Assembly (NCBI RefSeq): GCF_000143415.4
Contig: NW_003314305.1
Coordinates: forward strand, 1,336,834-1,400,833
Source: Selaginella moellendorffii
Taxonomy: Eukaryota > Plantae > Lycopodiophyta
Direction of reading: 5' to 3'
Length of the DNA: 64,000 nucleotides
In this document: positions 21,044-58,669 of the stretch, one piece after another
Numbering within the stretch: position 1 is the stretch's first letter
Layout of the letters: every line of letters starts with the position of its first letter
Notes under the pieces: generated by a model
Databases searched by the model: none
Seen by the model: only the letters and a program-made list of their open reading frames with translations
Told to the model about the DNA's origin: nothing
Position numbers and translations under genes: made by a program

Positions 21044-23215
21044 CTTTTATAGGCAACAACACGAGCAATGCGTGAAGGGGGCCAGAGAAGCTATTGAGAA
21101 GTACTCATTAGGTGCTGGTCGACCTCAAGTTCTTACTAAGCCAGGAGTTGGATGCTCTCCATGAGACTCGTGACCACGTACTGAGTCGCTTACTTGAAAT
21201 GGATGGCGGGATGCAGAATCCGAATCCCGATTATGTGCAGCGCGCTGGACAATGTTCCCAGTGCCAGCCTAGACACACTGGGATAACCTGTGCTCATTGT
21301 GCTATTGATCTCATGTTTCAGGTACAATCTACTTCTTTCTTGTGTGGATAAACAGAAATATGCAAATAGGCGATTTTACTTGACGTCCCGAGCAGCTGAA
21401 TTAGATGGCATTGTTACTGCAGAAGACGCCTTTGTTTCTCAAGTACGTTCACAGGCAGGAGAAAAGGAGCAGCAGTAGCTGCGGTAAGGCAACTTCTTTT
21501 TGTTTTTCTAACTTTTTTCTTTTGTTTTTCTTTCCTTCGAGCTTAAATATTTCTTTTCACAGGTTACGCACAGATGTTCTGAAACGGAAATGGTTTTAAA
21601 AATTTTACTTGCATACATGAAAGCGGAAACGAACCTTGAGGAGGATGAGATAGAAGCCGCAAAGAAGCACCTCGAGTACCTTGAAGTAAACACTCCTGTG
21701 CTTATTTGTAAGTCTGTTTGACAAACCGTGTCAATTCAGGCATTGCGTAGCGAATATGCAGCGGCGAGACGCTTGACAACAGCACAACAATTAGTTCTAA
21801 CTGCATTGGACGAGCTGAGCATGTCGACAACAAGGCTATGTTTGCTTGCAAGGTGCCAAGGCTGCAGACGGCAATCCTTTTGGTGATGAAGGCTACGAGA
21901 TAGCAATTAGAAACGCGGCGCTTACCAACGAAAAATTTGTTGCTGTTGAGAATCTATCTCGTGTGAAGAGGCAGCTCAGATACTTGAAGGTATTAGGCTT
22001 AAGTTTTCTTCTATTCGCAGCTCCTCTCATTTCCGGATTGCAGGGTCTAAGGAATAAGAAGGACGAGGGGCATAACAGTTTGGAAGGAGAAATTTGCCCA
22101 GTTTGCCACGATGGCATAGAATCTGGAGCAATGGTCCTTCCGTGCGGCCATTTGCTTTGTGGCAAGTGTAAGTTTTTGGTGTCTTACTTTGTTGGTTTCC
22201 TGAGCAAATCTTCATTTTACTTCGCAGGTTTGAATCTTATTGTGGACCGCCAGAAAGCACCAGCTAACGGTGCTGATTTCAAGCGCATTGCATGTCCAAC
22301 GTGCAGACAACAGACTTATGTCTCTAATATATGCTGAAGCGGCTTCTTCGAAAATTGCTGAAATCCTCCAGGAAGAAGAAGAGGACGAAGAAAAATCTAT
22401 AACCGTGGCAGGGTCGTACGGAACAAAGGTAATCTCGCTTTGTCGTCTGCTTTTTATTTTAATTCTTTTGCAAGTTTGAAGATTGAAGCTGTCGTCAGAA
22501 GAATTCTTAGTCTGAAAGAAGACGATCCGTTTGTGACAATTCTTGTGTTCTCGACGTGGCAAGAAGTGCTGGACTTGTTAGAACACGCACTGAAGAGCAA
22601 CAAGCTCAGCTGGGTTCGATTAAAGCAGCGCAGGTAACATCGATAATCTGTTTTACTTTTACTCATGTGCTCGTTTTGTGTTTTTCACAGACAAATGGGT
22701 TCTTCCATCTTGGAATTTAAGAAGGAGAACATCCAAGTCATGTTACTGCCCACACAACATGGTGCCAATGGCCTGAACTTAATAGAGGCCCAACACGTTA
22801 TTTTGGTGGAGCCTTTGCTCAATCCGGCAGTAGAAGCTCAGGCTATCAATCGAGTCCACCGGATTGGCCAACGTCTAAAGACACTTGTACATAGATTCAT
22901 TGTAAGTTACGTACGTTTCTTCTGTTTTCCAATTACTGACGACATTTCCAGATACGTAACACTGTGGAGGAGAACATCTACAAAATGAGCCAGCAGAAGA
23001 CGAACCTCCTTCCAATGAAACAAAAAGAGCAGCCTCTTTCAGCAAATGACATGAACAGCTTACTAGCTTGGGACGAACTGAAAGAGAACACATCTACTTC
23101 AAACACCCCCAGTGGTTCTACTCCTGATACTTTCCGAGATTTAACTCCGGCTCAAGCTGCTGCTGCTGCTGCTGAATCGCGGCTCTTGTGACTACAGGCC
23201 AACGCTTGCCTATAG
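21044..23215 (+). pseudogene. SHPRH: 5'-truncated SHPRH pseudogene, copy 3
   Basis: Enters at the equivalent of ~2679, jumps ~2760 to ~3625 at a CCTC microhomology; frameshifts; CGA>TGA near the end. Confidence 0.9.
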
Positions 23216-26124: not shown

Positions 26125-26885
26125 CTAGGCAAGCTGGAGTAGATCATCCTCCTTGACGCACAGCTGGTGCCCCTGACGGTTGTAGAGCTTGCAACCTTCC
26201 TTGAGTGGCTTCCTGCAAGTGTGGCAAGAGTTGAAGTCGAGCGCAACACTTTTTGGACCTGGGCAGACATAGGAAGCAGAGCCACATTTGAACGTGCAAG
26301 TTTTATCAGGTCCTGAGACGCATATCGATTTGCCATGCCCCAAGTCCAAGCAACCTTGAGGAATGCTGCAACAAGTAGCGCAGCTGCCTGGCGTCCAAGG
26401 ATGGACAGTGCCTCCACAAATCTCCACGGCATCCTTCAAGCAGGAGTTGTCATCACCATTTGGCAGTGGTGCACCAGTCTTTAAATTGTAGAGATGACAG
26501 CCATTCGAAGGCTCCTTACCCGGTGGGAGCACAGAAATTGGAATTTGGTTAGTCCATCGGGATGGGCAGACTTTGATTTTTGGTGGAAGACAAATTGGGT
26601 GGCAAGGACGAAAAGGGGCGGTGCCACCAAGACAAACTGGACTGCCAGTTCCAGGCTCGAGATATATGCATCCAGCCTCAAGCGTACAGCAATTGGAGCA
26701 TGCGTCCAGAGTGACAACAGCATCACTACAAACCTGGAGACGATGGCCGCTGGCTGCAAAATCATCTTGACAAGGCATTCAAGAAGTCAGTCCTGAAAGA
26801 AAGAATCAAAACTTGGAGATCAACCTGCAGATATCAGAAGTAGCTGAAAGCTTAGGATAGTGAGGAACAAGAATGAAGCTGCCAT
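26125..26885 (-). CDS. Pin-II-like inhibitor, copy 3 (reactive loops CHPIC / CTFKC)
   Basis: Intact two-exon gene, 24 Cys retained. Confidence 0.8.
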
Positions 26886-28518: not shown

Positions 28519-29279
28519 CTAGGCAAGCTGGAGTAGATCATCCTCCTTGACGCACAGCTGGTGCCCCCGACGGTTGTAGAGCTTGCAACCTTCCCTGAGT
28601 GGCTTCTTGCAAGTGTGGCAAGAGTTGAAGTCGAGCGCAACACTTTTTGGACCTGGGCAGACATAGGAAGCAAACCCACATTCGAGCGTGCAGGCTTTAC
28701 CAGGTCCTGAGACGCATACTGATTTGCCATGCCCCAAGTCCATGCAACCTTGAGGAATGGTGCAACAAGTAGCGCAGCTGCCTGGCTTCCAAGGATGGAC
28801 AGTGCCTCCACAAATCTCCACGGCATCCTTCAAGCAGGAGTTGTCATCACCATTTGGCAGTGGTGCACCAGTCTTTAAATTGTAGAGATGACAGCCATTC
28901 GAAGGCTCCTTATCCGGTGGGAGCACAGAAATTGGAATTCGGTTAGTTCCTCGGGATGGGCAGACTTTGATTTTTGGTGGATGACAAATTAAGGGGCAAG
29001 GACGAAAAGGGGAGGTGCCACCAAGACAAACTGGACTGCCAGTTCCAGGCTCGAGATATATGCATCCAGCCTCAAGCGCACAGCAACTGGAGCATCCGTC
29101 GAGAGTGACAACAGCATCACTACAAACCTGGAGACGATGGCTGCTGGCTGCAAAATCATCTTGACAAGGCATTCAAGAAGTCAGTCCTGAAAGAAAGAAT
29201 CAAAACTTGGAGATCAACCTGCAGATATCAGAAGTAGCTGAAAGCTTAGGATAGTGAGGAACAAGAATGAAGCTGCCAT
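28519..29279 (-). CDS. Pin-II-like inhibitor, copy 4 (protein identical to copy 2)
   Basis: Intact; translated ORF identical to 17701-18354. Confidence 0.8.
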
Positions 29280-30899: not shown

Positions 30900-32083
30900 A
30901 TTTATAGATCTTAGGAAAAAAGTACATTCTTTCTTCCCTTTCTAGGTCCCCATTCATGATTGTCCATATCTGCGGTAGAATCCAGTGCGGGATTGATTGC
31001 TCAGGCTCTTTAGCCCGGGATTTCTTGGACTGGATGGCTTCACCTCTCTTGCAATACCATTGATGCATGAGTGCGTGGAAGCAAATGTTCCAGCGGTGCT
31101 GTCTGCATGATCGTCGTATTGGAGGGCTTCGTTCTCATCCACAGCTGAGAATCTGGGGAGGCAGGGCAGATCGAGCTCCCACAGCTCCAGAAAATTGGTA
31201 AGATATCTTCTAACTTATCAATCGACGTGCAAAACTCATGAAGCTCCTCTTGCAGGAAGGAACAAGCCGAGCTTCCACTATCTCGCCGCCGAATCCACAG
31301 CCCTCCAATACGTTCTTCTTTTAAACTGGGAACTGACAAAGTTTCTATCCAGTTCTTAGTTCCAGACGCTAGACTTCGATGCAATGAAAGAGAGAAGAGA
31401 GAATCTGGACAGTCTTAAGCCCAAGATCGTTGACATGGTTGTCAAGAAGATGAAGCATGACACATATCTCTCGCTCGATTTCTTTACGCTGGCCATGAGA
31501 ATCTCCAGCTTCCGGCACGACGTGGTGATGGTCATGATCCTTGGAGTCGATGGCAACTATCTCATGGTGATCACAGACATGCCCCGTGGAAACGATCTCT
31601 ATGTGAAGACGAGGAAGCTGTGGCCGCCACATCGTCCGAGACAGCAGAAAGACCCCCAAGTAGGCTTGGATAGATTCAGCATGGTAGCAGTCCAACACCA
31701 GCTCGGGAGGAAGACTTAAACAGCCTACAAGAAGGAAAGCAACTCCGTGGATCTGATCATGAGTCACAAGCAGTACAGGCAGGAGCTCCACCTTCACAGC
31801 AGGAAGGAGTGGAACGTCCATGCAGTCAGGGACAAGTTTCTGGTCTACGAGACACTTCCTCACGTGAGCGACACCAGTGATGATCCTTTGGTGCTTTGCA
31901 GTCATGACAAGATCGTCATTGTTCGGCCCTTGTCAGTAACAGTGGACAACCGGGCAAAGAATGTCTCGTGGAACTCGTTGGGCTTGCGGGAATGCAAAGA
32001 AGAAACGGAGAACTATACGGTGCCGAGCAGTAAGGAGAGTCAGTCGGGTTTAGTTCCAGGCAAAGGATGAAGGAAGGAGGAGG
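30900..32083 (+). pseudogene. Third broken copy of the upstream segment plus chimeric-ORF 5' part
   Basis: Near-identical to 11080-12259 including the TAA stop and the same junction into SHPRH. Confidence 0.8.
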
Positions 32084-35463: not shown

Positions 35464-37763
35464 ATGGGTGCCAAGTTTCAGCCCCTTCCTCGCTTCTACT
35501 GGACGAAGGCTGCGATCAGAGACCTGTGCCGGGACGACGATCTCTACGTGAAGACGTAGTATGGTAGGAAGTTGAGGCCGCCGCCTCGTCCGCGACTAAG
35601 TCGAGAGCAGGAACGCTTTGTTCACACAGACCCTCAAGCAGGCTTGGATAGAATCAGTGGGCAGTGGGTAGCACTCCAACACCAGCTCGGGAAGAAGCAG
35701 GAAGGCACCTACATGGGTCCGATTCTGGGTCACAAGCAATACAGGTGCGAGCTCCATCTTCACAGGGGACAGAAGCAATGGAATGTCCATGCAGTCGGGG
35801 ACAAGTTTCTGGTCTACGAGACACTTCCTCCTGCGACCGACACCGGTGATGATCCTCCGGTGCTTTGTGGTCGCGACAAGTTCGTCATTGGTCGGCCTCT
35901 GTCACTAGACAACCGGGCGACGAATGTTTCCTCGTCGTGGAACTCGTTTCCAGTGTGGAGCTTGCCAAAAGAAGGCAAGGAGGGAACGATCGCTCTGCCG
36001 GGGAACTATATGGTGCCGAGCAGTAAGGTGGCGCTGCCGGGTTTAGTTCCAGGCAGAGGAGCGCTAGTCTTCGATGCCTTGTACGAGACTGTGAAGGAAG
36101 GAGGAGTGAGCTGGAGCTCCGAGATGGTTGAGAAGCTGGACAGGCTCAAGCATGGGATAATGCACCCCCACCAGGTCTGCGTGGTTCTCAAGAAGATCAA
36201 GCACGACGCATCTCTCTCGCTCAAGCTCTTTACGTGGGCCAAGACGATCCCAGGCTTCAAGCACGACTTGGTAAACTACTCGACGATGATCATGATCTTG
36301 GGAGATGACGGGAACTATCTCATGGCCGAGGCACTTTTTGTTGAGATCCAGGAGCTCGGGCTTCGCCTTGACACGTTTGCAGTGAACAACATGATCCGCT
36401 GCTACACAAGAGTGAACCGGATCCAGGAAGCTCTCGACCTCTACAGTAAGATGCCATACTTTGGCTGTCACCCGGACAATTGCACCTTCGGCCTCCTCAT
36501 CGACTGGTGCGGCAAGTTCGGCTCCCGGAAGGAGCTCCAACGGATCTTCCTCGACTTGAGAGCCTCCCCCCGCAATGCCGACGCGCAGACGTTCAACACA
36601 ATGATCCACAACTTCTGCAAGCAGCGGGACTTCACAAACGCCAGGGAAGCCGCCAACCAGATGAAAGCCTGGGTACGCCATCCTCATCCACATGTACGCC
36701 AAGGCTCGAGACTCGAAAGCAGCGGCAGAGCTCTACGCGGACTACCTCCGCTCCGGCCTAGAGCCAAACTTGATCGTCTACAACAACGTGATACTGAGTT
36801 ACGGTTCCAGCGGCTTCTCTGGCCATGCGCAGAACATCCTGGGTGATATACGAAAGGCCGGCCTCGCTCCAGATCGATTCACGTACTGCACGCTCATAAG
36901 TTCGTGGGCGAGAGCCGGAGCTATGCTGCAAGCCCGGCGATGGTTCAACAAAGCCTGCAAGACGAAGGCCGGTCCAAGCATCGAGATGTGCAACGCGCTC
37001 ATCGATGGCTACCTCAAGGCCCGAGAAGTGGAACCGGCCAAGTTCATCCTCACCAAAGTCATGCCGGAGAGAGGCGTGGAGCCGACGCTGCAAACGTACA
37101 CGATCCTCCTGGGTCACTACACGAGCAGCGTCAAGGTGGCGGACTCGAGAGCGGTGAGAGAGATGATGAAGTCGTCCTCGAAACCAGCAGCAACAGCAGC
37201 AGCAGGAGGAGGAGGAGGAGATGATCATCCCAGCGTGGACGAGTTCCTGAACGAGATCTTGCAAGGCCTCCGCGCGATCAAGGAGCTCAAGAGCTACTCG
37301 AGGGAGTTTTTCCGCAAGCTGAGGATGGACAAGCCTCCTCGCTGGGGGCGATGGCTGGCGGATGCTCTCGTCAACCATCTCCACTGCTTTGGCTACGCTC
37401 GCGAGGCCTTCTACGTGTGGGAGGGGGTCTCCTCCACAGAGCTCTACCCGAGAGGGATCTGGGAGGACTGGCAGGGAGCGTGGTTTATCTGGCTTGAGCT
37501 CCGGGACTGCGATGGTGGCGCTCACCAGTGGATTGATCGTGTCCAGGCGGAAGCTCGCGCGGGGATTCGAGAGGCCGGAGCGAGTGATCATCGTGTGTGG
37601 CTACGCGTCGGACAAGAGCAAGGAGGTGACCCATGCGGTGAACAGGACGCTGGTGGCTCTAGACTCGCCGTTTGAGCCTTTTATCTCTATGGGGAGATTT
37701 ATGTGCGAGGGGAACTTGTTTAGAGACTGGCTGTGGGAGAAGCAAGTTGCTATGGATGCTTAG
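35464..37763 (+). pseudogene. PPR-SMR pseudogene, unit 5
   Basis: TAG at 35557 shared with copy 2; 23-nt deletion ~36672 and 10-nt deletion ~37495 shift the frame. Confidence 0.88.
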
Positions 37764-38193: not shown

Positions 38194-38957
38194 CTAGGCA
38201 AGCTGGAGTAGATCATCCTCCTTGACGCACAGCTGGTGCCCCTGACGGTTGTAGAGCTTGCAACCTTCCTTGAGTGGCTTCTTGCAAGTGTGGCAAGAGT
38301 TGAAGTCGAGCGCAACACTTTTTGGACCTGGGCAGACATAGGAAACAAAACCACATTCGCGCGTGCAGACTTTACCAGGTCCTGAGACGCATATTGATTT
38401 GCCATGCCCCAAGTCCAAGCAACCTTGAGGAATGGTGCAACAAGTAGCGCAGCTGCCTGGCGTCCAAGGATGGACAGTGCCTCCACAAATCTCCACGGCA
38501 TCCTTCAAGCAGGACTTGTCATCACCATTTACTGGCAGTGGTGCACCAGTCTTTAAATTGTAGAGATGACAGCCATTCGAAGGCTCCTTATCCGGTGGGA
38601 GCACAGAAATTGGAATTCGGTTAGTCCCTCGGGATGGGCAGACTTTGATTTTTGGTGGTTCACAAATTAAGGGGCAAAGACGAGAAGCAGAGGTGCCACC
38701 AAGACAAACTGGACTGCCAGTTCCAGGCTCTAGATATATGCATCCAGCCTTAAGCGCACAGCAATTGGAGCATTCGTCCAGAGTGACAACAGCATCACTA
38801 CAAACCTGGAGACGATGGCTGCCGGCTGCAAAATCATCATGACAAGGCATTCAAGAAGTCAGTCCTGAAAGAAAGAATCAAAACTTGGAGATCAACCTGC
38901 AGATATCAGAAGTAGCTGAAAGCTTAGGATAGTGAGGAACAAAAATGAAGCTGCCAT
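38194..38957 (-). CDS. Pin-II-like inhibitor, copy 5 (reactive loops CPLIC / CTREC)
   Basis: Intact, one-codon insertion (LPVNG), 24 Cys retained. Confidence 0.8.
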
Positions 38958-46000: not shown

Positions 46001-48900
46001 AGCTCCAGCGCCATCGAGCAATACGTGTCCATTCCCGCCAAATTCTTCACATCTCTTCACGTCGCATGTAAGATCTCTATCTAGGCGTTGTCTTTCTTCC
46101 CCCCTAGGTCTCCATCGCCACAGCTGGCCATGATCGTCCGTGGCAGAATCCATCGCGAGGGAGAAATATTTGGATCGCCAGGGCCGGGATTTTCTTGGAT
46201 CGGCTGCTGGATTATTACAGCTTCACCTCTCTTGCGATAGTGTCGATGCATGAGCGCGTCAAGTGGATTTTCCAGCGCTGCTGTTGGCGTGATCTTCGTA
46301 CTGGTGCCTTCTCTTCTAGATATATTTGGCCAATTTGATCTGGTAAAATCTTCGTTATTAGACTGTCGAAAAATTCCACGAAGCTCCCATGCTTGCCAGC
46401 AACCACAATCCCGATGGTACCACAGAGTTTCCCAATTTGGAGGTCAAGAGCATCCTGGATCACGCTTCTATAGCACCGGATTATGTTGTTGACTGCAACC
46501 ATGTCGATGCAAAGCCCGAGCTCCTCTTTTTCATTGCATCGAAGACTTGAACTAGACAAAAAGAATAGAAACTTGTCATCATTTTATTGTAACAAGAACG
46601 ATTTTAGCTTACCAGTAGTGGATTGATTTGAGGGCTTCCTACCGCTAGAACTAGTTGCCGTGGCTGTGAATTCGGGGGCGAGATAGTGGAAGCTCGGCTT
46701 GTTCCTGCAAAAGGAACTTCATACGTAAGTTAGAAGGCATCTTACCAATTTGCTGGAGCTGCCGGAGCTCGATCCGGATTCTCAGCTGATAGATGACAGG
46801 GATTAGTGACGAGCCACAACTATAAATCGGCATTTCTGGGTCCGTAAGTGATGCTCGCTCCATCATAAGGGTACTGAAGATTGAAATCTCAAGTCAAGCT
46901 CCACCATGACTTGTGAGGCAACTGCAAATTTCGTCTTCCAGCACTGCACGAGATCACGCTTTTTCATTTTTAATCACAAAAAACTCTCCGCTGTTTGGAG
47001 AGACGAGTACTAGCTCTTGCAATTGGACGCAGTGGAACAGCCACACTTGACTATCTGTTAAGGTGGCCCGCATGCTGAAGATTTTGTGTGATTGGATTTT
47101 GTTTCCTTGTGTGATTGGATTAAGCTGCTTTTGAATTCTGCAGGGCAAGCTCACGGGAAGAAGCCACTCTGGGCCAAATCACTAATCTTGGACCTCGCAG
47201 AAGCATGCGACAAAATCAGAATCCCACTTTGATGTGCTGCTGCTGAAATATTCAAAGAGACCAAGAGGTAGACTAAATATGGTTTTGTTTCAGACAGGAT
47301 AACGAGGACTGAGAAAGTTTTTTTTGTCACTTTTAATTTTTTTCTCCTTCTTTCTCCTTCAGATGGCCAAGTGCTAGAAGCTTTAAGAAATTTCTGGTCA
47401 CCGGATGTTGATTGGCAAACATTGTGTGTCTGGTAAGAACACCGCGACAGAGTTGGAGCGATGATTGACGATTCCAACAAGAGAGGCATACAGCCCTCCA
47501 AATAAAGGATTGCTGTGATTTTATAACTGGGAAGGTGGCCATGATTGATGAACTAAGTGGGCTACACAGCAAAGGATCTGCCAGTGCCATATGAAGGTAG
47601 TGTGGCGACTCATGGGAAATTTTTCCCTCGGGATGCAAAAGGTGTGAGGGCTTTGATCGTCTTTATTGTTGACGAGGATAACGACGAAGCCATGGACGTG
47701 AGGGCGGAAAGGGTATGTTATGCGCTATGGCATTTTGTTTTCCACTTTTTAATTTTTTTCTCTTTTAGGTGTCTGAGGATGGCCAAGTGCTAGAAGCTGT
47801 AAGACATTTCTGGTCACCGGATGATGATTGGCAAACATTGTGTGTCTGGCAAGAACACCACGACAGAGCTGAAGCGATGATCGATGATTCCATCAAGAGA
47901 GGCGAGATTCTTTTGTGCTAAAATGCTATTACTCTCTAGAAAACGTCTAAAACATATTCTCCTTCTACCATATTGGTAAGAGAAGTTCTTCGAAAATTTC
48001 AGCAGCAGCAACTCAAAGTGGGATTTAACATTTGAATATGGATAAATATCTGGCTCCACCGCAGTGTGGATCATTGTCACATGCTTCTGCGGGGGCATCT
48101 TCTTCCATTGCCTTCTAATCCTCTTGCCGCGCCCTAAACTTTGAATCAGTGCCTTGGCGGCACGCTGACGTGGCAGCAATGAATGCATCCTCTTCAGAAA
48201 TCGAGCATATCCCCTTCCCTTCCCGCCTAAATTCGCCCTAGTCGTGCCCAAGTATCTTTGGTATATTCTCCGCATCTTTAACTTCACGGCCAGCAGAACA
48301 CCGAGGGAGAAGAAGATCTCTGCCTAGGGTTTTACAGATCGATCGATAGATTTCTAGGCGCTTGGCAGCATTGAGAAATCATCCACAAGGTACATTCTTT
48401 CTTCCCTTGCTAGGTCGCCATCGCCATAGTTCACCAGGATTGTCTAGATCTGCAGCAGAATCCAGCGCGGGATTGATCGCTCAGGCTCTCTAGGCCGGGA
48501 TTTCTTGGACTGGATGCTGGATTATCACGGCTTCACCTCTTTTGCAATAGCATCGATGCATGAGCGCGTGGAAGCGACTGTTCCAGCGGTGCTGTTGGCG
48601 TGATCGTCGTATTGGAGAGCGTGGTTCTCATCCACCAGCTGAGAATCCGGGCAGGCAGGGTAGATCGAGCTCCCACGGCTCCAGAAAATTGGTAAGCTAT
48701 CTTCTAACTTATAGATCGACGTGCATAACTCATGAAGCTCCTCTTGTAGGAAGGAACAAGCCGAGCTTCCACTATCTCGCCGCCAAATCCACAGCCAACT
48801 GTGACTAGTTCTAGCAGAGGAAAGCATTGGTACGTTCTTCTTTTAAACTGGGAACTGACAAGTTTCTATCCAGTTCTTAGTTCCAGACGCTAGACTTCGA
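43023..48900. repeat. Mosaic of gene-like fragments of unknown family, repeated in direct and inverted orientation at 52-58 kb and 61-64 kb
   Basis: e.g. 43060-43520 direct to 53630-54100; 44800-45170 direct to 62815-63180; 45800-47490 largely direct to 56574-58235. Confidence 0.7.
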
Positions 48901-48947
48901 AAGAGAGAAGAGAGAATCTGGACATTCTCAAGCCCGAGATCATTGAC

Positions 48948-51900
48948 ATGGTTGTCAAGAAGATGAAGCATAACACATATCTCTCGCTCGAGTTCTTTAC
49001 GCTGGCCATGAGAATCTCCAGCTTCCGGCACGACGTGGTGATGGTCATGATCCTTGGAGTCGATGGCAACTATTTCATGGCGATCACAGACATGCCCCGT
49101 GGAAACGATCTCTACGTGAAGACGAAGTATGACAGGAAGCTGCGGCCTTCACCTCGTCCCAGACAGCAAAAAGTCCCCGAAGCAGGCTTGGATAGGTTCA
49201 GCATGGTAGCAGTCCAACACCAGCTCGGGAGGAAGACTTACACAGCCGACGAGCAGGAAGGCAACTACGTGGATCTGATAATGAGTCACAAGCAGTACAG
49301 GCAGGAGCTCCATCTTCACAGAGGGAAGAAGCAGTGGAACGTCCGTGCAGTCAGGGACAAGTTTCTGGTCTACGAGACATTTCCTCCCGCGAGTGACACT
49401 GGTGATGATCCTCTGGTGCTTTGCGGTCGCGACAAGATCGCCATTGTTCAGCCATTGTCAGTAACAGTGAACAACCAGGCGAAGAATGTCTCATGGAACT
49501 CGTTGGGCTTGCAGGAATGCAAAGAAGAAACAGAGAACTATATGGTGGCGAGCAGTAAGGAGGGTCAGCCGGGTTTAGTTCCAGGCAAAGGAGCTCTAGT
49601 CGTCCACAAGACTGTGAAGAAAGGAGGAGGGAGCTGGAGCTTCAAGACGGTTGCGAAGCTGGATAACAGGCTCAAGGCTGGGATAACGCACCCCTACCAG
49701 CTCTGCGTGTTTCTCAAGAATGCCTCTCTCTCACTCAAACTCTTTACGTGGGCCAAGACAATGCAGCACGACCTGGTGATGATCATGATCCTGCCCGACT
49801 ATCTCATGGTGATCACAGAACTGCCCCGTGACGACGATCTCTACGTGAAGACGAAGCATGGTAGGAAGCTCGGGCCACCACCTTGTAGTCGAGAGCAGGA
49901 ACTCGCAGACCACCAAGCAGGTTTCAGTGTGGCAGCACTCCACCACCAGCTCGGGAAGAAGACTTACACAACCGAAGAGCAGGAAAGCAATTGCGTGGAT
50001 CCAATCCTGAGTCACAAGGAATACGGGCGGAAGCTCTACCTTCATAGTGGGAAGGAGCAATGGAACGTCCATGCAGTCGAGGACAAGTTTCTGGACTACG
50101 AGACAGTGAGCGACAGCGATGATGATCCTCTGGAGCTTTGCGGTCGCAACAAGTTCGTCAGTGGTCAGCCTTTGTCAGTAACAGTGGACAACCAGGCGAC
50201 GAAGGTCTCCTTGTCATGGAACTCGTTTCCAGTGTGGAGCTTGCGAGAAGGAACAGAAGAAACGGGGAACTATATGGTGCTGAGCAGTAAGGTGGTGCTA
50301 CCAGGTTTACTTCCAGGCAAAGGAGCTCTAGTCTCCAATGCTTTGTGTGAGATTGTGAAGGAAGGAGGAGGGAGCTGGAGGTCCGAGATAGTTGAGAAGC
50401 TGGACAGGCTCAAGCGCGGGAAAACGCACCCCCACCAGGTCTGCGTTGCTCTCAAGAAGATGAAACACGATGCATCTCTCAGGCTCTCTACGTGGGCCAA
50501 GACGATCCCTGGCTCAAAGCACGACTTGGTAAACTACTGCACGATGATCATGATCTTGGGAGATGACGGCGACTATCTCATGCGGGAGGCACTCTTCATT
50601 GATCTCCAGGAGCTCGGGCTTTGCATCGACACGTTCGCAGTGAACAACATGATCCCCTGCTACACAAGAGTGAACCGGATCCAGGAAGCTGTCGACCTCT
50701 ACAGAAAGATACCATACTTTTCAGACAATTGCATCCCCGGCCTCCTCGTCGACTGGTGCAGCACTGGTCTCCAGGGAAACAATAAGATGGCAGTTCCAGA
50801 CAGCGGCACGCTAGTCTTGAATGCTTTCTATGAGGCAATGGAAGAGGGAGGAGGGAGCTGGGACTTTGAGACGGCTGAAAATCTAGACAGACTTAAGCGT
50901 GGGATCAACATGGTTCTCAAGAAGCTCCAGCACGATGCATCTCTTGCACTCGAGCTCTTTATCCTGGCCAAGACGATCCCTGGTTTCCAGCATGACCTGG
51001 CCAACTACTCAACGATGATCATGATCCTGGGAAACGCTGGTAACTATCTCATGGCCAAGGCACTCTTCACTGAGATTCAGGAGCTCGGGCTTTGCATCGA
51101 CATGGTTGCAGCCAACAACATAATCCGCTGCTACACAAGCGTGATCCAGGATGCTCTTGACCTCCAAATTGGGAAACTCTGTGGTACCATCGGGATTGCG
51201 GTTGCTGGCAAGCATGGGAGCTTCGTGGTATTTTTCGACAGTCTCGTAACGAAGATTGCATCAGATCAAATTGGCCAACTATATCTAGAAGAGAAGGACA
51301 GGGAATACCAGAAAGTGACTGTGATTCGTGACGAGCCACAACTACAAATCGGCATTGTTGGGTCCGTAAGTGATGCTCGCTGCATCATAATGGTACTGAA
51401 GATTGAGATGTCAAGTCAGGCTCAGCATGGAGTCACCATGACTTGTGAGGCAGCTGCAAATTTCGTCTTCCAGCGCTGCGTGGCTGATGAGCACTGTACG
51501 AGATCAAGCTTTTTCATTTTTGACAACAAGAAACTCTTCGCTGTTAAGAGAGACAACACGCGCCAGTACCAGCTCTTGCAATTGGACGCAGTGGAACAGC
51601 CGTTTTTGACTATCGGTTCTGGTGGCCCGCATGCCGAAGGTATTCTGCGAGATCCACGGCCAGGTGTGGTTGGATTTTGTTTCCTTGAGATTGGATTAAG
51701 CTGCTTTTGAATTCTGCAGGGCAAGCTCACGGGAAGAAAGCCACTCTGGGCCAAATCACTAATCTTGGGCTCGATGCCCTCGCAGAAGCATGCGACAATG
51801 ATCCACATTGCGGCGGAGACAAATATTATGCATATTCAAATGTTAAATCCCACTTTGATGAGCTGTTGCTGAAATTTGCGAAGAAGAACTTCTCTTACCA

Positions 51901-51952
51901 ATATGCGAGAAGAAAGAGACCGAGAGGTAAACTAAACATGGCTTTGTTTTAG
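48948..51952 (+). CDS. Chimeric gene: tandem partial repeats of the PPR-SMR N-terminal region fused to a proteasome-beta-like Ntn-hydrolase domain (exons 48948-51663, 51720-51952)
   Basis: 920-codon uninterrupted ORF; recurring DLYVKTK..RKL / KHDASL..LF..AKTIPG..HDL..MIMILG units; C-terminus G-T-IGIAVAG..DS..QKV..GSVSD..TIGSGGPHAEGIL; a 56-nt GT-AG intron restores frame to ..ALAEACDNDPHCGG. Confidence 0.65.
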
Positions 51953-51977
51953 ACATTTTCTAAGGAGTAATAGCATT

Positions 51978-52995
51978 TTAGCACAAAAGAATCTCGCCTC
52001 TCTTGATGGAATCATCGATCATCGCTTCAGCTCTGTCGTAGTGTTCTTGCCAGACACACAATGTTTGCCAATCAACATCCGGTGACCAGAAATTTCTTAC
52101 AGCTTCTAGCACTTGGCCATCCTCAGACACCTAAAAGAGAAAAAAATTAAAAAAGTGGAAAACAAAAGCCATAGCATACCCTTTCCGCCCTCACGTCCAT
52201 GGCTTCGTCGTTATCCTCGTCAACAATAAAGACGATCAAAGCCCTCACACCTTTTGCATCCCGAGGGAAAAATTTCCCATGAGTCGCCACACTACCTTCA
52301 TATGGCACTGGCAAATCCTTTGCTGTGTAGCTCAAGAGGTAGTACTCTCGCCCACTTAGTTCATCAATCATGGCCACCTTCCCAATTATAAAATCGCCCT
52401 TATAATTCTTGACCATGGCTTCCATCATCTGCCTGGCAATCGCCTCCATCGCGACCTCGACCTAAAACAATGCCTGGACAGCAATCCTTTATTTGGAGGG
52501 CTTGCATCCAAAAGTGACTTACTCCCGGAATATTCTACAGCAGTCCTTTATTTGGAGGGTTGCATCTTCATTAAAATAAAATCATCAAAACAGCTTACTA
52601 TAATCCGTTGGTCTCATGTTTTCTTGGTGGGCGCTGCAAGACCTTATAAACAATTAATGAATGAATGAATGAAAACAGTGTTGGCTATGTTTCAGAATTT
52701 GTCCAACATTGAATCCAGTTTTCAAGAAGCTCAAATAAGCCACCAGCTCCAGAGCTACACTTTCGGTGTCTTTGCCTACGTTCCAGCGCCTGGATACAAG
52801 GACATAGGAGTGGACTTTAACTCCGCCCGAGTTTAAGGTACACACTCTCCGCTTGTTTGCCAAAAGAAGTGTCAATGCATAGTATTGCTTAAGTCCCATC
52901 AGAGACCAGGCCAAGAAGCAAAGCGAATCACCGTGTATTATAGCGTTGTGAGCATTGCAAGGCTTCCCGGCAGCATCTAACAAGGATTTAGCCAT
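51978..52995 (-). CDS. Multi-exon hypothetical protein gene, convergent with the chimeric gene; inverted copy at ~63420-64000, fragments at 47.3-47.9 kb
   Basis: ORF 52449-52180 splices over a 49-nt GT-AG intron (52179-52131) in frame to a 153-nt last exon (VSEDGQVLEAVRNFWSPDVDWQ...GEILLC*); 5' exons uncertain. Confidence 0.45.
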
Positions 52996-55610
52996 GCCAT
53001 TTCTGTAACCTGAGAATTAAAGTCATTACAGACTTTCCAGGCAATTGCGTCTCCAGCCTCCCATCGACTGGTGAAACGCTACTCTTTAGGAAACAGTGAG
53101 GTGGCAGTTGCAGCAGAGGGAATGGGACTCTGAGACGGCTGAAATCTGGACAGACTTAAGCGTTGGATCAACATGGTTCTCAAGAAGCTCGAGCACAATG
53201 CATCGCTTGGGCTAGTGAAGGCTTCAACTCCGTTCCCCGAGTCCAACGTACACACTCTAAGATCTCGTTGTCTTTTCATAGCAGTTTGCAGACGAATTTC
53301 TATCCGGGACTGCAAGCTCATCACCCTGCTTACAAGCATACAGCAAGGGAAAGCGGTGGAATCCAAGTATCTCACGTATGTCAAAGTAAGTCGCTCGAAA
53401 AGCTTACAAGAAGAGCGTAACACTTTTTATGCATAGGTACATAGGTAGTAGGATACATCGATGTCGATGGTGGGGTTGTGACGAGGATTTGATAGCTGAG
53501 AGCAGTGGTACGATGCAAATGTCTCAATTCCAGGCTGCGATAAAGAAATCTTTTTTCGCTTTCATTTATTTTTCGTGCTGCTGTGGGGATACATACGATC
53601 AGTGCAGCTTTCCAGGTCTTTCTGGTTCTGTTCTATTCGCGTAGCACGCTGCGATTTTTTTATAATGTACCTCTTACGAGCAGCTGAGCATTCATGTCCA
53701 GGTGCTAAGCTTGTGGCGGAATGTACACGAGTGAAGCCTTGCACGTCCCTTCCTTATAGGTCTCTGTCTATTTTGGATAGAAACTTCTTTCCTTCTTTTG
53801 TTAAGTGTAGTTCTTCCATTCCATCTGAAGACCCTCTGAAGTGACATGACTACCGGCTGCTTGGAAAACCTTGATGAAACTTATGAGCACGAAAGAGTCG
53901 CTTCACAATGCCATGGTCCTCGTAATGAGGATCGACAAAGACACCGCAATTTCGAGGTAGTGGAAACTTTATTTTCTGGTTACTGAATTCGTTAGCCATG
54001 TGCTGGCCACAAAGTTTGCTCGCCTTATAATAGATCACTTCAATTTATTGTGGATCTATTAAGTGAAGCATTCAGCAAACTATGTAAGCTGCACAGCTCT
54101 AAAACAAAACCATATTAAGTTACCTCATCAAAGTGGGATTCTGATTTTGTCGCATGCTTCTGCGAGGTCCAAGATTAGTGATTTGGCCCAGAGTGGCTTC
54201 TTCCCGTGAGCTTGCCCTGCAGAATTCAAAAGCAGCTTAATCCAATCACACAAAATCTTCGGCATGCGGGCCACCTTAACAGATAGTCAAGTGTGGCTGT
54301 TCCACTGCGTCCAATTGCAAGAGCTAGTACTCGTCTCTCCTTACAGCGGAGAGTTTTTTGTGATTAAAAATGAAAAAGCGTGATCTCGTGCAGTGCTGGA
54401 AGACGAAATTTGCAGTTGCCTCACAAGTCATGGTGGAGCTTGACTTGAGATTTCAATCTTCAGTACCCTTATGATGGAGCGAGCATCACTTACGGACCCA
54501 GCAATGCCGATTTATAGTTGTGGCTCGTCACGAATCCCTGTCCTTCTCTTCTAGATATATTTGGCCAATTGGATCTGGTAAAATCTTCGTTATGAGACTG
54601 TCGAAAAATTCCACGAAGCTCCCATGCTTGCCAGCAACCAGAATCCCGATGGTACCACAGAGTTTCCCAGTTTGGAGGTCAAGAGCATCCTGGATCACGC
54701 TTCTATAGCACCGGATTATGTTGTTGACTGCAACCATGTCGATGCAAAGCCCGAGCTCCTCTTTTTCATTGCATCGAAGACTTGAACTAGACAAAAAGAA
54801 TAGAAACTTGTCATCATTTTATTGTAAGAAGAACGATTTTAGCTTACCAGTAGTGGATTGATTTGAGGGCTTCCTACCGCTAGAACTATTTGCAGTGGCT
54901 GTGAATTCGAGGGCGAGATAGTGGAAGCTCGGCTTGTTCCTGCTTCATACGTAAGTTAGAAGGCATCTTACCAATTTGCTGGAGTGCCGGAGCTCGATCC
55001 GGATTCTCAGCTGATAGATGAGAACCAAGTTCACCAGTACGACGATCACGCCAACAGCGCTGGAAAATCCACTTGACGCGCTCATGCATCGACACTATCG
55101 CAAGAGAGGTGAAGCCGTAATAATCCAGCAGCCGATCCAAGAAAATCCCGGCCCTGGCGATCCAAATATTTCTCCCTCGCCACGGACGATCATGGCCAGC
55201 TGTGGCGATGGAGACCTAGGGGGGAAGAAAGACAACGCCTAGATAGAGATCTTCCTAGATAGAGATCTTACATGCGACGTGAAGAGATGCGAAGAATATA
55301 CCAGAGATACTTGTGAATAGGCGGGAATGGACACGTATTGCTCGATGGCGCTGGAGCTCAAGATCCGTCTTTCTTGGATTCCAGCGCAAGAGGAATTTGT
55401 GGCTTATGAACTCGATCATATAAGTAGATCTTTCCTAGAACGAGCTGTGCTCTTTTCCTGGAATTTTCTGTTCAGGAAGTACAAGCGCAATGTTTTGCCA
55501 CTACTCCCAGGACATCGCATTAAGGTCACGAAAAAGGTTTCACTTTCACTTGTTTTGTTTTGGGCATTTTCAAATGCCAGATTTAAATTGCAAAAAAAAT
55601 AAAAAAAATT

Positions 55611-56573
55611 GCTGCGCGTTGCGTTGCAGCAACGCTTGGTTTGCTTTTGTTTTTAAATATTTTTTATTATGATATATAATTTGTTATGATCTGTCCAATA
55701 TGCAGGTGCTATTCCTGCTTTTGTATATATTATATCTTTTATCCATATATGATCTATTAATTTATTATTACGTGTATTGTGTTTTATCCTTCTTTCTCCA
55801 TTATTGTTTGAAGTGGTTTTACTTCTTCTATTTGGTAGTCAATATTAAAATCTCCTGTAGTTATTACTGGTTTTTTATTATCTATTTTCTGTATATATTT
55901 TTGTAGTTGTTTTATGAATATATGTATATTTGTTCCAGGTTTTCTATGTAAATTTATTATCTGTAATTGTTTTTTATTTTTTTCTAGTGATACATATGAC
56001 ATTGCCATTGTTTCTGTTTTTAAATGTTCTACTATTTCTGATTTGTAGTCATTTGTATGCAACATTGTTCATGTATATATGATTTATATTTATTAAAATA
56101 TAAATCCTCATGTTTTTGTGTTCTTACTTCTTGCATACATATTATATCTGATGTTAATAATTGTGAATCACTCTTTATATCTTCTTGATGTGCAGTAATA
56201 GATCTTGTATTTGGAACTTGTATAATTGTTTGGTTAGCTGTTTTTTCTTCTTGTAAATCTATTAAATCAATTTGCCATGGTGCTTCTGTTGTCATTCTTA
56301 TTATTTCTTTAGCTGCATCTTTATTGATTTTAATATGTTTATGTTCAATTGGTCTATATAAATGTATCCCTTTTAGTGTTTGTGCTCTTGATAATGTGGT
56401 ATATGCTTGTCTTGGATATTTTGTTTTATATGGGTCATATCCTAATTGCATAACTGTTGATCCTTGTGCTCTATGTCCTGCACATGGTTGTAATGGAAAT
56501 TGGGTTCTACTTATAACATTGTTTTTATTTTTAGTAATATTTATTGTTCTTGTTTTTTTTTTTATTGGTGTCC
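55611..56573 (-). mobile_element. 5'-truncated Helentron/Helitron2-type rolling-circle element fragment (PIF1 helicase C-terminus + AP/EEP endonuclease)
   Basis: RTQFPL..HRAQGST..QAYTTLSRA (PIF1 motifs V/VI), then NTRS, DIICMQE, GDFN, LIDHIW (~55743-55760) and YWTDH (~55686-55700); palindrome GCGTTGC-A-GCAACGC at 55621-55635; strongly AT-rich; empty site at ~45720-45830. Confidence 0.8.
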
Positions 56574-57359
56574 GTGAAACCTTTTTTCGTGACCTTAATG
56601 CGATGTCCTGGGAGTAGTGGCAAAACATTGCGCTTGTACTACCTGAACAAAAAATTCCAGGAAAAGAGCACAGCTCGTTCTAGGAGAAGATCTACTCATA
56701 TGATCGAGTTCATAAGCCACAAATTCCTCTTGCGCTGATTGTCCCTCGGAATCCAAGAAAGACGGATCTCGAGCTCCAGCGCCATCGAGCAATACGTGTC
56801 CATTCCCGCCAAATTCTTCGCATCTCTTCACGTCGCATGTAAGATCTCTATCTAGGCGTTGTCTTTCTTCCCCCCTAGGTCTCCATCGCCACAGCTGGCA
56901 TGATCGTCCGTGGCAGAATCCATCGCGAAGGAGAAATATTTGGATCGCCAGGGCCGGGATTTTCTTGGATCGGCTGCTGGATTATTACGGCTTCACCTCT
57001 CTTGCGATAGTGTCGATGCATGAGCGGGTCAAGTGGATTTTCCAGCGCTGCTGTTGGCGTGATCTTCGTACTGGTGAACTTGGTTCTCATCTATCAGCTG
57101 AGAATCCGGATCGAGCTCCGGCAGCTCCAGCAAATTGGTAAGATGCCTTCTAACTTACGTATGAAGTTCCTTTTGCAGGAACAAGCCGAGCTTCCACTAT
57201 CTCGCCCCCGAATTCACAGCCACGGCAACTAGTTCTAGCGGTAGGAAGCCCTCAAATCAATCCACTACTGGTAAGCTAAAAAATTTCTTCTTACAATAAA
57301 ATGATGACAAGTTTCTATTCTTTTTGTCTAGTTCAAGTCTTCGATGCAATGAAAAAGAG

Positions 57360-57970
57360 GAGCTCGGGCTTTGCATCGACATGGTTGCAGTCAACAACAT
57401 AATCCGGTGCTATAGAAGCGTGATCCAGGATGCTCTTGACCTCCAAATTGGGAAACTCTGTGGTACCATCGGGATTGTGGTTGCTGGCAAGCATGGGAGC
57501 TTCGTGGAATTTTTCGACAGTCTCATAACGAAGATTTTACCAGATCAAATTGGCCAAATATATCTAGAAGAGAAGGACAGGGATTCGTGACGAGCCACAA
57601 CTATAAATCGGCATTGCTGGGTCCGTAAGTGATGCTCGCTCCATCATAAGGGTACTGAAGATTGAAATCTCAAGTCAAGCTCCACCATGACTTGTGAGGC
57701 AACTGCAAATTTCGTCTTCCAGCACTGCACGAGATCACGCTTTTTCATTTTTAATCACAAAAAACTCTCCGCTGTTTGGAGAGACGAGTACTAGCTCTTG
57801 CAATTGGACGCAGTGGAACAGCCACACTTGACTATCTGTTAAGGTGGCCCGCATGCCGAAGATTTTGTGTGATTGGATTAAGCTGCTTTTGAATTCTGCA
57901 GGGCAAGCTCACGGGAAGAAGCCACTCTGGGCCAAATCACTAATCTTGGACCTCGCAGAAGCATGCGACA
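57360..57970 (+). pseudogene. Broken copy of the PPR/proteasome-beta-like 3' part (others at ~54140-54760 (-) and ~46307-47220)
   Basis: ELGLCIDMVAVNNIIRCY..LQIGKLCGTIGIVVAGKHGSF then deletion and stop. Confidence 0.75.
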
Positions 57971-58669
57971 AAATCAGAATCCCACTTTGATGTGCTGCTG
58001 CTGAAATATTCAAAGAGACCAAGAGGTAGACTAAATATGGTTTTGTTTTAGACAGGATAACGAGTTTTTTTTGTCACTTTTAATTTTTTTCTCCTTCTTT
58101 CTCCTTCAGATGGCCAAGTGCTAAAAGCTTTAAGAAATTTCTGGTCACCGGATGTTGATTGGCAAACATGGTGTGTCTGGTAAGAACACCGCGACAGAGT
58201 TGAAGCGATGATTGACGATTCCAACAAGAGAGGCATATAAGTGATTAAAACAAGAAAGTATTTTATAATTTTAAATTAGAAATAAAACTTTTAAACTTTA
58301 GTGAGGTATTATTTAAATTTATAGAAACATATAATACATAGTAAGTTATGTGGTATTATATTTTTCCTCATCTTTTTAATTTTTAATTTTAACTTGAAGT
58401 AAACAAATACATTATTCACTCCAACATATATTTTTCCCAGCAAAGCTGGGATCTTTACTAGTCTTTTTACATATCAACTATTAAATTAAGAAGTGTTTAG
58501 AAAAGTTTATAATTTATAAACATTATACATACAAGATTTATCCCAAAATATTCAAGTATATTTTAGATATAGCAATTAACATGGTATAGGACTTGGTGAA
58601 TGTAAAACATGCCTAAGAAAGAGCTACATAATATATCAAATAATCAGTCTCTATTATCCATACTATATA

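What the first reader, a model, noticed from the sequence alone, without database searches (positions are those of the whole stretch)
48948..51952. Chimeric gene: amplified PPR N-terminal repeats fused to a proteasome-beta-like Ntn-hydrolase domain
Seen: a 920-codon open frame built from about four diverged partial copies of the neighbouring PPR-SMR 5' region, with many indels but no loss of frame. From 51183 it reads G-T-IGIAVAGKHGSFVVFFDS..YQKV..IGIVGSVSDAR..MTCEAAANFV..FLTIGSGGPHAEGIL and, after a 56-nt intron, LGLDALAEACDNDPHCGG. Known: 20S beta subunits/HslV have Gly|Thr1, Asp17-Ser, Lys33, Gly47-x-x-x-Asp, GSG(129) and D166xxSGG in this order and self-cleave at Gly|Thr. Inference: a young, possibly functional gene whose ~746-aa PPR-derived part sits where a propeptide would and might be released autocatalytically. 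Sibling copies in the window are all broken.
Basis: partly seen in the sequence, partly recalled or inferred. Interest (0 to 1): 0.78.

Follow-up and report, generated by a model that had tools for sequence, protein, structure and literature searches.

The report
Spikemoss PPR-fragment / proteasome-like fusion gene
A spikemoss (Selaginella moellendorffii) gene joins about 746 codons copied from the front of a neighbouring PPR gene to a very divergent but intact-looking copy of the proteasome's cutting subunit; it shows signs of past selection, but nobody has tested whether it is read or whether it cuts itself.

Summary
Window 48948-51710 is a 920-codon ORF. Its first 739 codons are four rearranged pieces of the 5' region of the neighbouring PPR gene. 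From Gly746-Thr747 (51183) it runs into a proteasome-beta/HslV-type Ntn-hydrolase domain.

Evidence for the domain:
- Pfam PF00227 and TIGR03634 give weak, colinear matches.
- A family profile hits archaeal beta subunits in the PDB at E 3.6e-6.
- An AlphaFold model matches only proteasome subunits and HslV (Z up to 13.8), with Thr747 on Thr1.
- The Thr1, Asp17, Lys33, Gly47, Ser129 and Asp166 equivalents are present; Ser169 is Cys.

The domain belongs to a small family found only in S. moellendorffii. This scan had already met it on other DNA, including an inverted paralogue just past the window's end.

New here:
- The gene is not young. The ORF has no stops where 4-11 are expected, and all 22 gap blocks are in frame.
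- After the fusion, the intact copy kept family-conserved residues 13:2 against its broken siblings.
- The other haplotype has an in-frame 1791-nt deletion in the PPR-derived part.
- The 56-nt intron fits the family better than the database's 80-nt model.
- A small unknown gene sits beside the domain in all three clades.

Expression, splicing and self-cleavage are untested.

The parts
48948..51663 (+). Exon 1 of the chimeric gene: 905 full codons plus the first base of a split codon
   Evidence: ORF; called gene on GL377609.1; donor GT at 51664
48948..49082 (+). PPR-derived piece 0 (aa 1-45, matches parent aa 251-299)
   Evidence: BLASTP. The same mosaic start is present in sibling fragments at 11613-12243, 20716-21043 and 31435-32067.
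49080..49808 (+). PPR-derived piece 1 (aa 45-287, matches parent aa 20-298)
   Evidence: dN/dS 0.48, dS 0.29
49797..50777 (+). PPR-derived piece 2 (aa 284-~610, matches parent aa 16-~345)
   Evidence: dN/dS 0.51, dS 0.26
50793..51164 (+). PPR-derived piece 3 (aa 616-739, matches parent aa 206-337); holds the only Pfam PPR motif (aa 687-715)
   Evidence: dS 0.56
49166..50958 (+). Segment absent from the allele on the other haplotype (GL377567.1). Net loss is 1791 nt, in frame.
   Evidence: Homology to the parent runs across both breakpoints, so the long form is ancestral.
51183..51188 (+). Gly746-Thr747, the predicted processing site and N-terminal nucleophile
   Evidence: Invariant GTIG in the family. 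The model's Thr aligns with residue 1 of mature beta subunits.
51186..51663 (+). Proteasome-beta-like domain, first part (Thr1 through the GSG motif and ILRDPRPG)
   Evidence: PF00227 E 3.3e-4; TIGR03634 E 1.6e-5; PDB profile hits
51664..51719 (+). Predicted 56-nt intron (GT..AG, phase 1). It is an insertion specific to the PPR-fusion lineage.
   Evidence: keeps the family motif. Clades A and B have no intron here. No RNA evidence.
51720..51952 (+). Exon 2: rest of the domain (LGLD..AC..DxxCGG, NFSYQY..LNMALF) and stop TAG at 51950-51952
   Evidence: The C-terminal LN..ALF motif is shared with the family, which argues against the extra 3' splice in the database model.
51978..52449 (-). Conserved neighbour gene 'nb' (~140 aa; exons 52449-52180 and 52130-51981, stop codon 51980-51978). 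It converges on the fusion gene, with about 25 nt between the two stop codons.
   Evidence: Homologues sit beside the beta-like genes of the other two clades.
46307..47290 (.). Broken sibling copy c46. It is split and partly inverted: 46540-46307 on the minus strand, 46793-47290 on the plus strand.
54126..54780 (-). Broken sibling copy c54, with shared deletions of 20, 10, 18 and 9 nt and 3 stops
57340..58050 (+). Broken sibling copy c57
47517..48099 (.). Left arm of an inverted repeat. The right arm, 51773-52395, carries the 3' end of the fusion gene and nb.
   Evidence: 89-98% complementary blocks

Best explanation
This is a protein-coding chimeric gene of Selaginella moellendorffii. The best model is 48948-51663 joined to 51720-51952, about 982 codons.

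Shown:
- The first ~745 codons are rearranged, duplicated copies of the non-PPR leader and the first one or two PPR motifs of the adjacent PPR gene.
- The last ~236 codons are a very divergent proteasome-beta/HslV-type Ntn-hydrolase domain. The Gly|Thr1, Asp17, Lys33, Gly47, Ser129 and Asp166 equivalents are present, and Cys stands in place of Ser169.
- The fusion is old. It is shared by broken siblings and by an inverted paralogue.
- After the fusion, the intact lineage kept family-conserved residues.
- The long upstream frame stayed open although its amino-acid sequence drifted almost freely.

Inferred:
- The selected part is the C-terminal Thr-protease-like domain.
- The PPR-derived stretch is a translated but nearly sequence-indifferent leader that has to stay in frame, so that ribosomes starting upstream reach the domain.
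- To become active, everything before Thr747 must be removed, most simply by the domain's own Gly|Thr autolysis as in proteasome beta subunits.

The two loci on the two haplotypes each carry one full-length copy and one altered copy, which fits redundancy after a recent inverted duplication. Expression, splicing, cleavage, assembly and activity are all untested.
For: Domain identity:
- PF00227 matches the focal exon at E 3.3e-4 and all 5 family members tested, best 5.3e-7.
- TIGR03634 (archaeal beta) matches at E 1.6e-5.
- A domain-only family profile against the PDB gave 56 hits, all proteasome or HslV. The best was an archaeal beta subunit at E 3.6e-6. Lys33, AGsvgDA, GSG and D..SG columns aligned.
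- The AF2 model's top 500 Foldseek hits are all proteasome or HslV at about 1e-7.
- VIA-align gave Z 12-13.8, with the model's Thr167 on residue 1 of mature beta chains.

Family: invariant GTIG, FDSL, K, AG, SFF, IGSG, GQ, LGLD and CGG columns across three clades that are 37-40% identical.

Selection:
- No stops where 3.9-11 are expected (P <= 0.018), and 22 of 22 gap blocks are in frame.
- dN/dS of the PPR-derived part is 0.28-0.66.
- Of the polarisable amino-acid differences from the siblings, 13 keep the family state in the focal copy and 2 in the sibling (binomial P about 0.004, my own calculation from the counts).
- Between the two intact long copies, the beta domain has 5 non-synonymous and 5 synonymous changes (omega about 0.3). 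The PPR-derived part has omega 0.76.

Allele and paralogue structure.
Against: - No transcript, splice or protein evidence could be obtained here. An earlier agent's note says the paralogue gave no RNA reads; I did not check that.
- Recent evolution is close to neutral overall (omega 0.62, P = 0.10).
- This haplotype's copy has lost the upstream ATG used by the other three copies, through a 9-nt deletion.
- It also carries Ala->Val at a family-invariant position next to the Gly47 equivalent.
- The allele has deleted 597 codons of the leader and the paralogue is frameshifted in it. The leader may therefore be dispensable or untranslated.
- A 746-residue propeptide is about ten times longer than any I know of in beta subunits (my own knowledge). 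It would not fit inside a closed ring before cleavage.
- The intron is absent from the other clades. If it is not spliced, the protein ends at 51710 without the last third of the domain.
- The AF2 model is of low confidence overall (pLDDT 44; the core reaches 70-90).
Confidence: 0.5

Rival explanations
1. The gene is a decaying mosaic pseudogene. It was assembled by repeated local duplication, inversion and deletion, and its long ORF is only a leftover. The proteasome-like domain is a dead copy of a functional family member elsewhere.
For: - The region is riddled with rearranged duplicates.
- There are three broken siblings.
- The paralogue has a 19-nt frameshift and the allele a 1.79-kb deletion.
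- Recent omega is 0.6-0.9 and is not significantly below 1.
- The window copy has lost an ATG and has Ala->Val at an invariant site.
- No exact product was seen on any contig other than the genome assembly.
Against: - No stops where 4-11 are expected, and all 22 gap blocks are in frame.
- 13:2 retention of family-conserved residues against the siblings.
- Every catalytic position is intact.
- Two long copies that are 1.8% apart are both fully open.
- The beta domain has omega of about 0.3 between them.
Confidence: 0.25
2. The functional product is only a short proteasome-like protein. It would start at an internal Met close to the domain, for example the ATG at 51102, about 27 codons before Gly-Thr. 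That would give a leader like the ~17-residue leaders of the stand-alone family members. On this reading the upstream PPR-derived frame is untranslated 5' sequence.
For: - Stand-alone members P0006 and P0007 have 17-residue leaders before GT.
- Both natural lesions (the 1791-nt deletion and the 19-nt frameshift) hit only the upstream part and leave the last ~75 leader codons and the domain intact.
- The sibling lineage looks like a start-region-to-ELGLC deletion of the same kind.
Against: It does not explain why about 2.2 kb of upstream frame stayed free of stops and frameshifts over dS 0.26-0.56.
Confidence: 0.17
3. The fusion was made and spread by a gene-capturing transposon (Helitron or Pack-MULE type). 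That would explain why the same domain is found fused to unrelated gene pieces elsewhere in this genome.
For: - Earlier notes of this scan place Helitrons 22-33 kb past the window's end and list fusions of this domain with other genes (not checked here).
- TE-like ORF remnants lie at 56032-56628 (my reading of the sequence only).
Against: - There is no nucleotide similarity between the flanks of the three clades' loci.
- No terminal repeats bracket the L003 gene pair beyond AT-rich low complexity.
- The copies here are explained by local tandem and inverted segmental duplication.
Confidence: 0.05

Closest known systems
20S proteasome beta subunits (archaeal PsmB, eukaryotic beta1/2/5; Pfam PF00227)
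   Same: Same fold (Z up to 13.8). Gly|Thr1 follows an N-terminal extension. The Asp17, Lys33, Gly47, Ser129 and Asp166 equivalents come in the same order. The best sequence matches are archaeal beta subunits.
   Different: - Only about 12-19% identity over structural alignments.
- The focal exon scores below Pfam's cut-off.
- Ser169 is Cys.
- Loops are longer: the Lys33 equivalent is residue 43 after Thr.
- The leader is about 746 residues, against at most about 75 in known propeptides (my own knowledge).
- No alpha-subunit partner is known.
- It has been seen in one plant species only.
HslV/ClpQ and bacterial stand-alone homologues (Anbu, BPH)
   Same: A stand-alone Thr1 Ntn peptidase domain that would work outside the 20S particle. 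HslV chains are among the structural and profile hits.
   Different: Sequence matches are weaker than to archaeal beta subunits (E 0.2 against 4e-6). HslV has no propeptide, and no HslU-like gene is nearby. No relative was found in bacterial, metagenomic or viral collections.
The S. moellendorffii-only proteasome-like family (SELMODRAFT_403023/422680, LOC112344941, LOC9635678 and others)
   Same: The focal domain is a third clade of this family, 37% identical, and shares 47 invariant columns. All three clades have the small neighbour gene nb.
   Different: Clades A and B encode the domain core in one exon. Clade A has an intron just before Gly-Thr. Only the PPR-fusion clade has the 56-nt insertion/intron and the PPR-derived leader.
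Chimeric new genes made from duplicated gene fragments (for example Drosophila jingwei; plant Pack-MULE or Helitron chimeras)
   Same: A new reading frame built from duplicated pieces of a neighbouring gene joined to another gene's domain, followed by local copy turnover.
   Different: No retroposition or transposon hallmarks were found. The captured pieces are internally amplified and appear to be kept only as an open frame.

Membership tests
Proteasome beta / HslV-type Ntn hydrolase (PF00227) | Significant match to the family's sequence profile | tested here: inconclusive
   The focal exon scores 20.8 bits against a cut-off of 22.4 (E 3.3e-4). TIGR03634 gives E 1.6e-5, far below its equivalog cut-off. 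All 5 family members hit PF00227, best 5.3e-7. The family profile hits archaeal beta subunits at E 3.6e-6, and only proteasome or HslV chains are hit.
Proteasome beta / HslV-type Ntn hydrolase (PF00227) | Alpha-beta-beta-alpha Ntn sandwich fold | tested here: met
   The AF2 model of the allele's database protein P0003 was used. All of the top 500 Foldseek hits are proteasome subunits or HslV, E about 1e-7. VIA-align gives Z 12-13.8 over residues 164-380. Caveat: mean pLDDT is 44, with the core at 70-90.
Proteasome beta / HslV-type Ntn hydrolase (PF00227) | Nucleophile Thr that becomes residue 1, preceded by Gly | tested here: met
   GTIG is invariant in 8 of 8 family members. The model's Thr167 (window Thr747) aligns with residue 1 of mature beta chains.
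Proteasome beta / HslV-type Ntn hydrolase (PF00227) | Asp/Glu17 and Lys33 of the catalytic triad; Gly47 | tested here: met
   The FDS Asp is 16-17 residues after Thr. The invariant Lys aligns with the KK(I/L) Lys33 of archaeal beta subunits, and (A/V)G-S-V-S-D-A aligns with AGsvgDA. The window allele has Val for the invariant Ala before this Gly.
Proteasome beta / HslV-type Ntn hydrolase (PF00227) | Ser129, Asp166, Ser169, Gly170 | tested here: inconclusive
   IGSG is invariant. The focal copy has D-P-H-C-G-G, so Asp166 is present (it is Asn in clade A). Ser169 is Cys in all members.
Proteasome beta / HslV-type Ntn hydrolase (PF00227) | Autocatalytic removal of the N-terminal extension; peptidase activity; ring assembly | not testable with these tools
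   Needs expression, a Thr747Ala control, activity-based probes, and SEC or cryo-EM.
PPR protein (the N-terminal part) | Tandem array of PPR motifs able to bind RNA | tested here: not met
   Only one PF01535 motif (aa 687-715, E 6e-7) and a PPR_2 trace. The copied pieces cover parent aa 16-345, mostly the non-PPR leader. The parent's main array at aa 318-514 and beyond is not included.
Transposon-captured chimera (Helitron / Pack-MULE) | Element termini or shared element DNA around the captured pieces | tested here: not met
   No nucleotide similarity between the family loci. No convincing terminal repeats. This was not a genome-wide test.

The most novel reading that the evidence does not exclude
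The Selaginella-only proteasome-like domain is a portable self-cleaving module. Wherever it lands behind an open frame (PPR pieces here; other genes elsewhere according to earlier notes), it cuts itself free at Gly|Thr. That yields an active stand-alone Thr protease and releases the upstream polypeptide. The small gene nb, conserved beside it in all three clades, encodes its regulator, inhibitor or assembly partner. This would be a new two-gene protease system in a land plant.
Probability: 0.12. Interest if true: 0.85.

Novelty: new variant of a known kind. Interest (0 to 1): 0.58.

Why it matters
Apart from the 20S subunits themselves, plants are not known to have stand-alone proteasome-type threonine proteases (my own knowledge). 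Two full-text searches found no paper on these proteins. A lineage-specific family that keeps every catalytic residue, is repeatedly joined to scavenged gene pieces and always travels with the same small neighbour gene would be new. It would add a case to how Ntn hydrolases evolve and self-activate. It would also give a clear example of a new gene whose captured part is kept only as an open frame. This locus adds natural variants for testing whether the leader matters: a full-length copy, one with a 597-codon in-frame deletion, and one with a frameshift.

Tried and rejected
- phmmer of the focal exon against the PDB found nothing relevant. A profile was needed.
- The single-sequence search of 1.84 billion representatives found only S. 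moellendorffii proteins, plus two repeat-driven false hits: a Bartonella YadA-like adhesin and a repeat protein.
- Motif scans with the family alignment in bacterial/archaeal genomes, JGI metagenomes and viral contigs found no relative.
- Transposon capture: no shared flanks or termini.
- The neighbour gene nb has no hit in the Pfam scan up to E 10 for the window and L003 copies; the L004 copy gave one weak hit, PF12254, E 0.054, below its cut-off. The nb profile gave only two sub-threshold PDB matches (E 0.48 and 1.2), and the protein atlas score was 0.87 or less. Foldseek E was 0.6 or worse. The best VIA-align Z was 5.6, to Ugi-, PepSY- and cystatin-like alpha+beta folds, which is below the level that means more than a common arrangement.
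- The database's 80-nt intron (donor 51640) and its extra 3' splice at 51927 are rejected in favour of donor 51664 and the stop at 51952. The database versions delete family-conserved residues.
- The exons were searched separately by reference. I did not build or search a joined spliced protein. The only spliced sequence used was the database's own model of the allele (P0003).
- Exact-product look-ups found the 920-aa and 396-aa products only on the genome assembly. This says little about expression.
Full report
**What is there.** The window is Selaginella moellendorffii scaffold GL377609.1. The 920-aa product of ORF 48948..51710 is a called gene on that scaffold, and all close protein hits are from this species. 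The left 40 kb holds roughly 9-kb tandem units. Each unit carries a PPR gene (5900-8272 and three more copies), a Pin-II proteinase-inhibitor gene, and pieces of an SNF2/PHD/RING gene.

**The PPR-derived part.** BLASTP of the ORF against the 790-aa PPR protein splits its first 739 residues into four pieces:
- aa 1-45 = parent 251-299
- aa 45-287 = parent 20-298
- aa 284-~610 = parent 16-~345
- aa 616-739 = parent 206-337

Most of what was copied is the parent's non-PPR leader. Only one Pfam PPR motif survives, at aa 687-715.

**The C-terminal domain.** From Gly746-Thr747 (51183-51188) the frame leaves PPR homology, which ends at 51164.
- The exon 51171-51707 gives PF00227 at E 3.3e-4. That is 20.8 bits, just under the 22.4 cut-off.
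- The shorter reference 51171-51638, cut at the database donor, gives TIGR03634 (archaeal proteasome beta) at E 1.6e-5. Both matches are colinear.
- A search of 1.84 billion representatives with 51171-51638 found only S. moellendorffii proteins. A profile word search added three more.
- The relatives fall into two clades besides the focal one, and the three are 37-40% identical to one another.
- All five members tested hit PF00227, best 5.3e-7.
- A domain-only profile hit 56 PDB sequences, every one a proteasome subunit or HslV. The best was an archaeal beta subunit at E 3.6e-6. The family's invariant Lys lies on Lys33, AG-x-V-x-D-A on AGsvgDA, IGSG on GSG(129), and D-x-x-C-G-G on D166-x-x-S-G.
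- I modelled the database protein of the allele, P0003, which is 1 residue different in the domain. The model was poor overall (pLDDT 44, core 70-90). Even so, its top 500 Foldseek matches were all proteasome subunits or HslV. VIA-align gave Z 12-13.8, with the Thr on residue 1 of mature beta chains.

So the domain is a true, very divergent member of the proteasome-beta/HslV fold, with the catalytic positions filled. Ser169 is Cys throughout the family.

**Gene model.** Two donors (51640 and 51664) are in phase with the acceptor at 51719. The JGI model of the allele uses 51640.

Clades A and B have no intron here; their domain core is a single exon. The 56 nt are therefore an insertion specific to the PPR-fusion lineage, and they must be spliced for the last third of the domain to be made.

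The family's C-terminal LN..ALF motif supports the stop at 51952 rather than JGI's further splice.

**Copies.**
- Three other beta-like copies in the window share the same PPR/beta junction. They also share deletions of 20, 10, 18 and 9 nt and three stops. They descend from one already broken ancestor.
- A near-identical inverted paralogue lies about 320 nt past the window's end (L005). On this haplotype it has a 19-nt deletion that shifts the frame in the leader. Its allele on the other haplotype (L006) is open for 947 codons.
- The focal gene's own allele (L001, SELMODRAFT_404515) lacks window 49166-50958, a net 1791 nt, in frame. It otherwise differs at 2 of about 1270 coding bases.
- Parent homology crosses both deletion breakpoints, so the long form is ancestral.
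- Each haplotype therefore has one full-length copy and one altered copy.
- The window copy has lost, by a 9-nt deletion, the upstream ATG that the other three copies have. It also has Val for a family-invariant Ala at 51358.

**Selection.** Against the parent, the PPR-derived pieces have dS 0.26-0.56 and dN/dS 0.28-0.51. The two longest pieces compared with each other give 0.66. So the gene is not young, and its leader is only weakly constrained in sequence.

Yet 713 aligned codons with 338 base differences contain no stop. Simulated neutral change gives 3.9-11 stops, with P(none) of 0.018 at most. All 22 codon-level gap blocks are in frame.

In the beta domain, 15 amino-acid differences from the broken siblings can be polarised with the other clades. 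In 13 the focal copy keeps the family state, and in 2 the sibling does. I calculated binomial P of about 0.004 from these counts.

Between the two intact long copies, the beta domain shows 5 non-synonymous and 5 synonymous changes (omega about 0.3). The leader shows omega 0.76, and the total is 0.62 with P = 0.10. Long-term constraint on the domain and on frame integrity is therefore clear. The recent record is too thin to say whether it still holds.

**Mechanism.** The simplest reading is that the selected product is the Thr-protease-like domain, and that the leader is translated only as a way to reach it. A stop in the leader would end translation before the domain.

Activation needs a free Thr747. 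Proteasome-type Gly|Thr autolysis is the obvious route. It remains an inference, and a 746-residue propeptide would be unprecedented and hard to fit inside a closed ring. An internal start near 51102 is the main alternative. It fits the natural deletion and frameshift variants, but it does not explain the preserved frame.

**Origin.** No relatives were found in prokaryotic, metagenomic or viral collections. No shared flanking DNA or element termini link the family's loci. No paper mentions these proteins.

**Earlier notes.** Earlier notes of this scan had already reported this family on other DNA of the same genome. These include the inverted paralogue and fusions to other genes. I confirmed the paralogue's frameshift, the restriction to this species and the intron before Gly-Thr in clade A. 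I did not test the other fusions or any RNA claims.

**A new observation.** A small two-exon gene of unknown fold (nb, 52449-51978, minus strand) lies beside the beta-like gene here. Homologues at 28-36% identity lie beside the beta-like genes of both other clades, in three different orientations. Structure and family searches did not identify it.

Noticed in passing
window 51978-52449 (-); L003 10989-11515 (+); L004 8799-9331 (-): A ~140-aa two-exon gene of unknown function ('nb') is adjacent to the proteasome-like gene in all three clades of the family. The orientation is convergent here, tandem in L003 and head-to-head in L004. Identity is 28-36%, and the second exon is also conserved. The AF2 model of exon 1 is one helix on a five-stranded antiparallel sheet (pLDDT 70), with only weak cystatin/PepSY/Ugi-like resemblance (Z <= 5.6).
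   Followed up: partly
window 8678-9331, 17701-18354, 26125-26778, 28519-29172, 38194-38850 (all -): There are five copies of a 217-218-aa cysteine-rich ORF. The one copy scanned (8681-9331) matches the potato type II proteinase inhibitor family (PF02428, E 1.9e-12). The copies are spread among the ~9-kb tandem units that hold the PPR gene.
   Followed up: partly
window 5900-8272, 15046-17289, 23357-25555, 35572-37675 (+): Four tandem copies of the parent PPR gene. The two compared (5900-8272 and 23357-25555) are nearly identical (dS 0.018). The fourth is broken into two ORFs, and the third is truncated at its 3' end.
   Followed up: partly
window 11086-12243, 20161-21044, 30919-32067: Each tandem unit carries a fragment 86-89% identical to 48387-49592, that is, the fusion gene's upstream region and first ~215 codons, including the same mosaic start. 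The 5' block of the fusion gene is thus one more copy of a unit-embedded PPR 5' fragment. Two of the three show a frame change.
   Followed up: partly
window 47517-48099 and 51773-52395: An inverted repeat of about 600 nt brackets the fusion gene, with blocks 89-98% complementary. Each arm holds the 3' end of a beta-like exon 2 and a copy of nb. This points to inverted duplication or gene conversion at the gene's 3' end.
   Followed up: partly
window 56032-56628 (-): A 198-aa ORF with no Pfam hit at E <= 0.001. By eye, its sequence resembles a PIF1/Helitron-type helicase tail followed by the start of an AP-endonuclease-like (LINE) domain. It is probably a transposon remnant, inside a segment (55550-57870) that is absent from the other haplotype.
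   Followed up: no
L004 7073-9331 (-): The database's 350-aa model here starts with the nb homologue. Further on it contains a fragment of a beta-like C-terminus (8300-8563, 48% identical to P0005). This is either another scrambled copy or a mis-joined model.
   Followed up: no
UniProt name of P0008 (SELMODRAFT_422680): One clade-B member is auto-named 'Glutamine amidotransferase type-2 domain-containing protein', which is a different Ntn family with a Cys nucleophile. Its Pfam match here is Proteasome, so the name looks like a rule-based mislabel.
   Followed up: no
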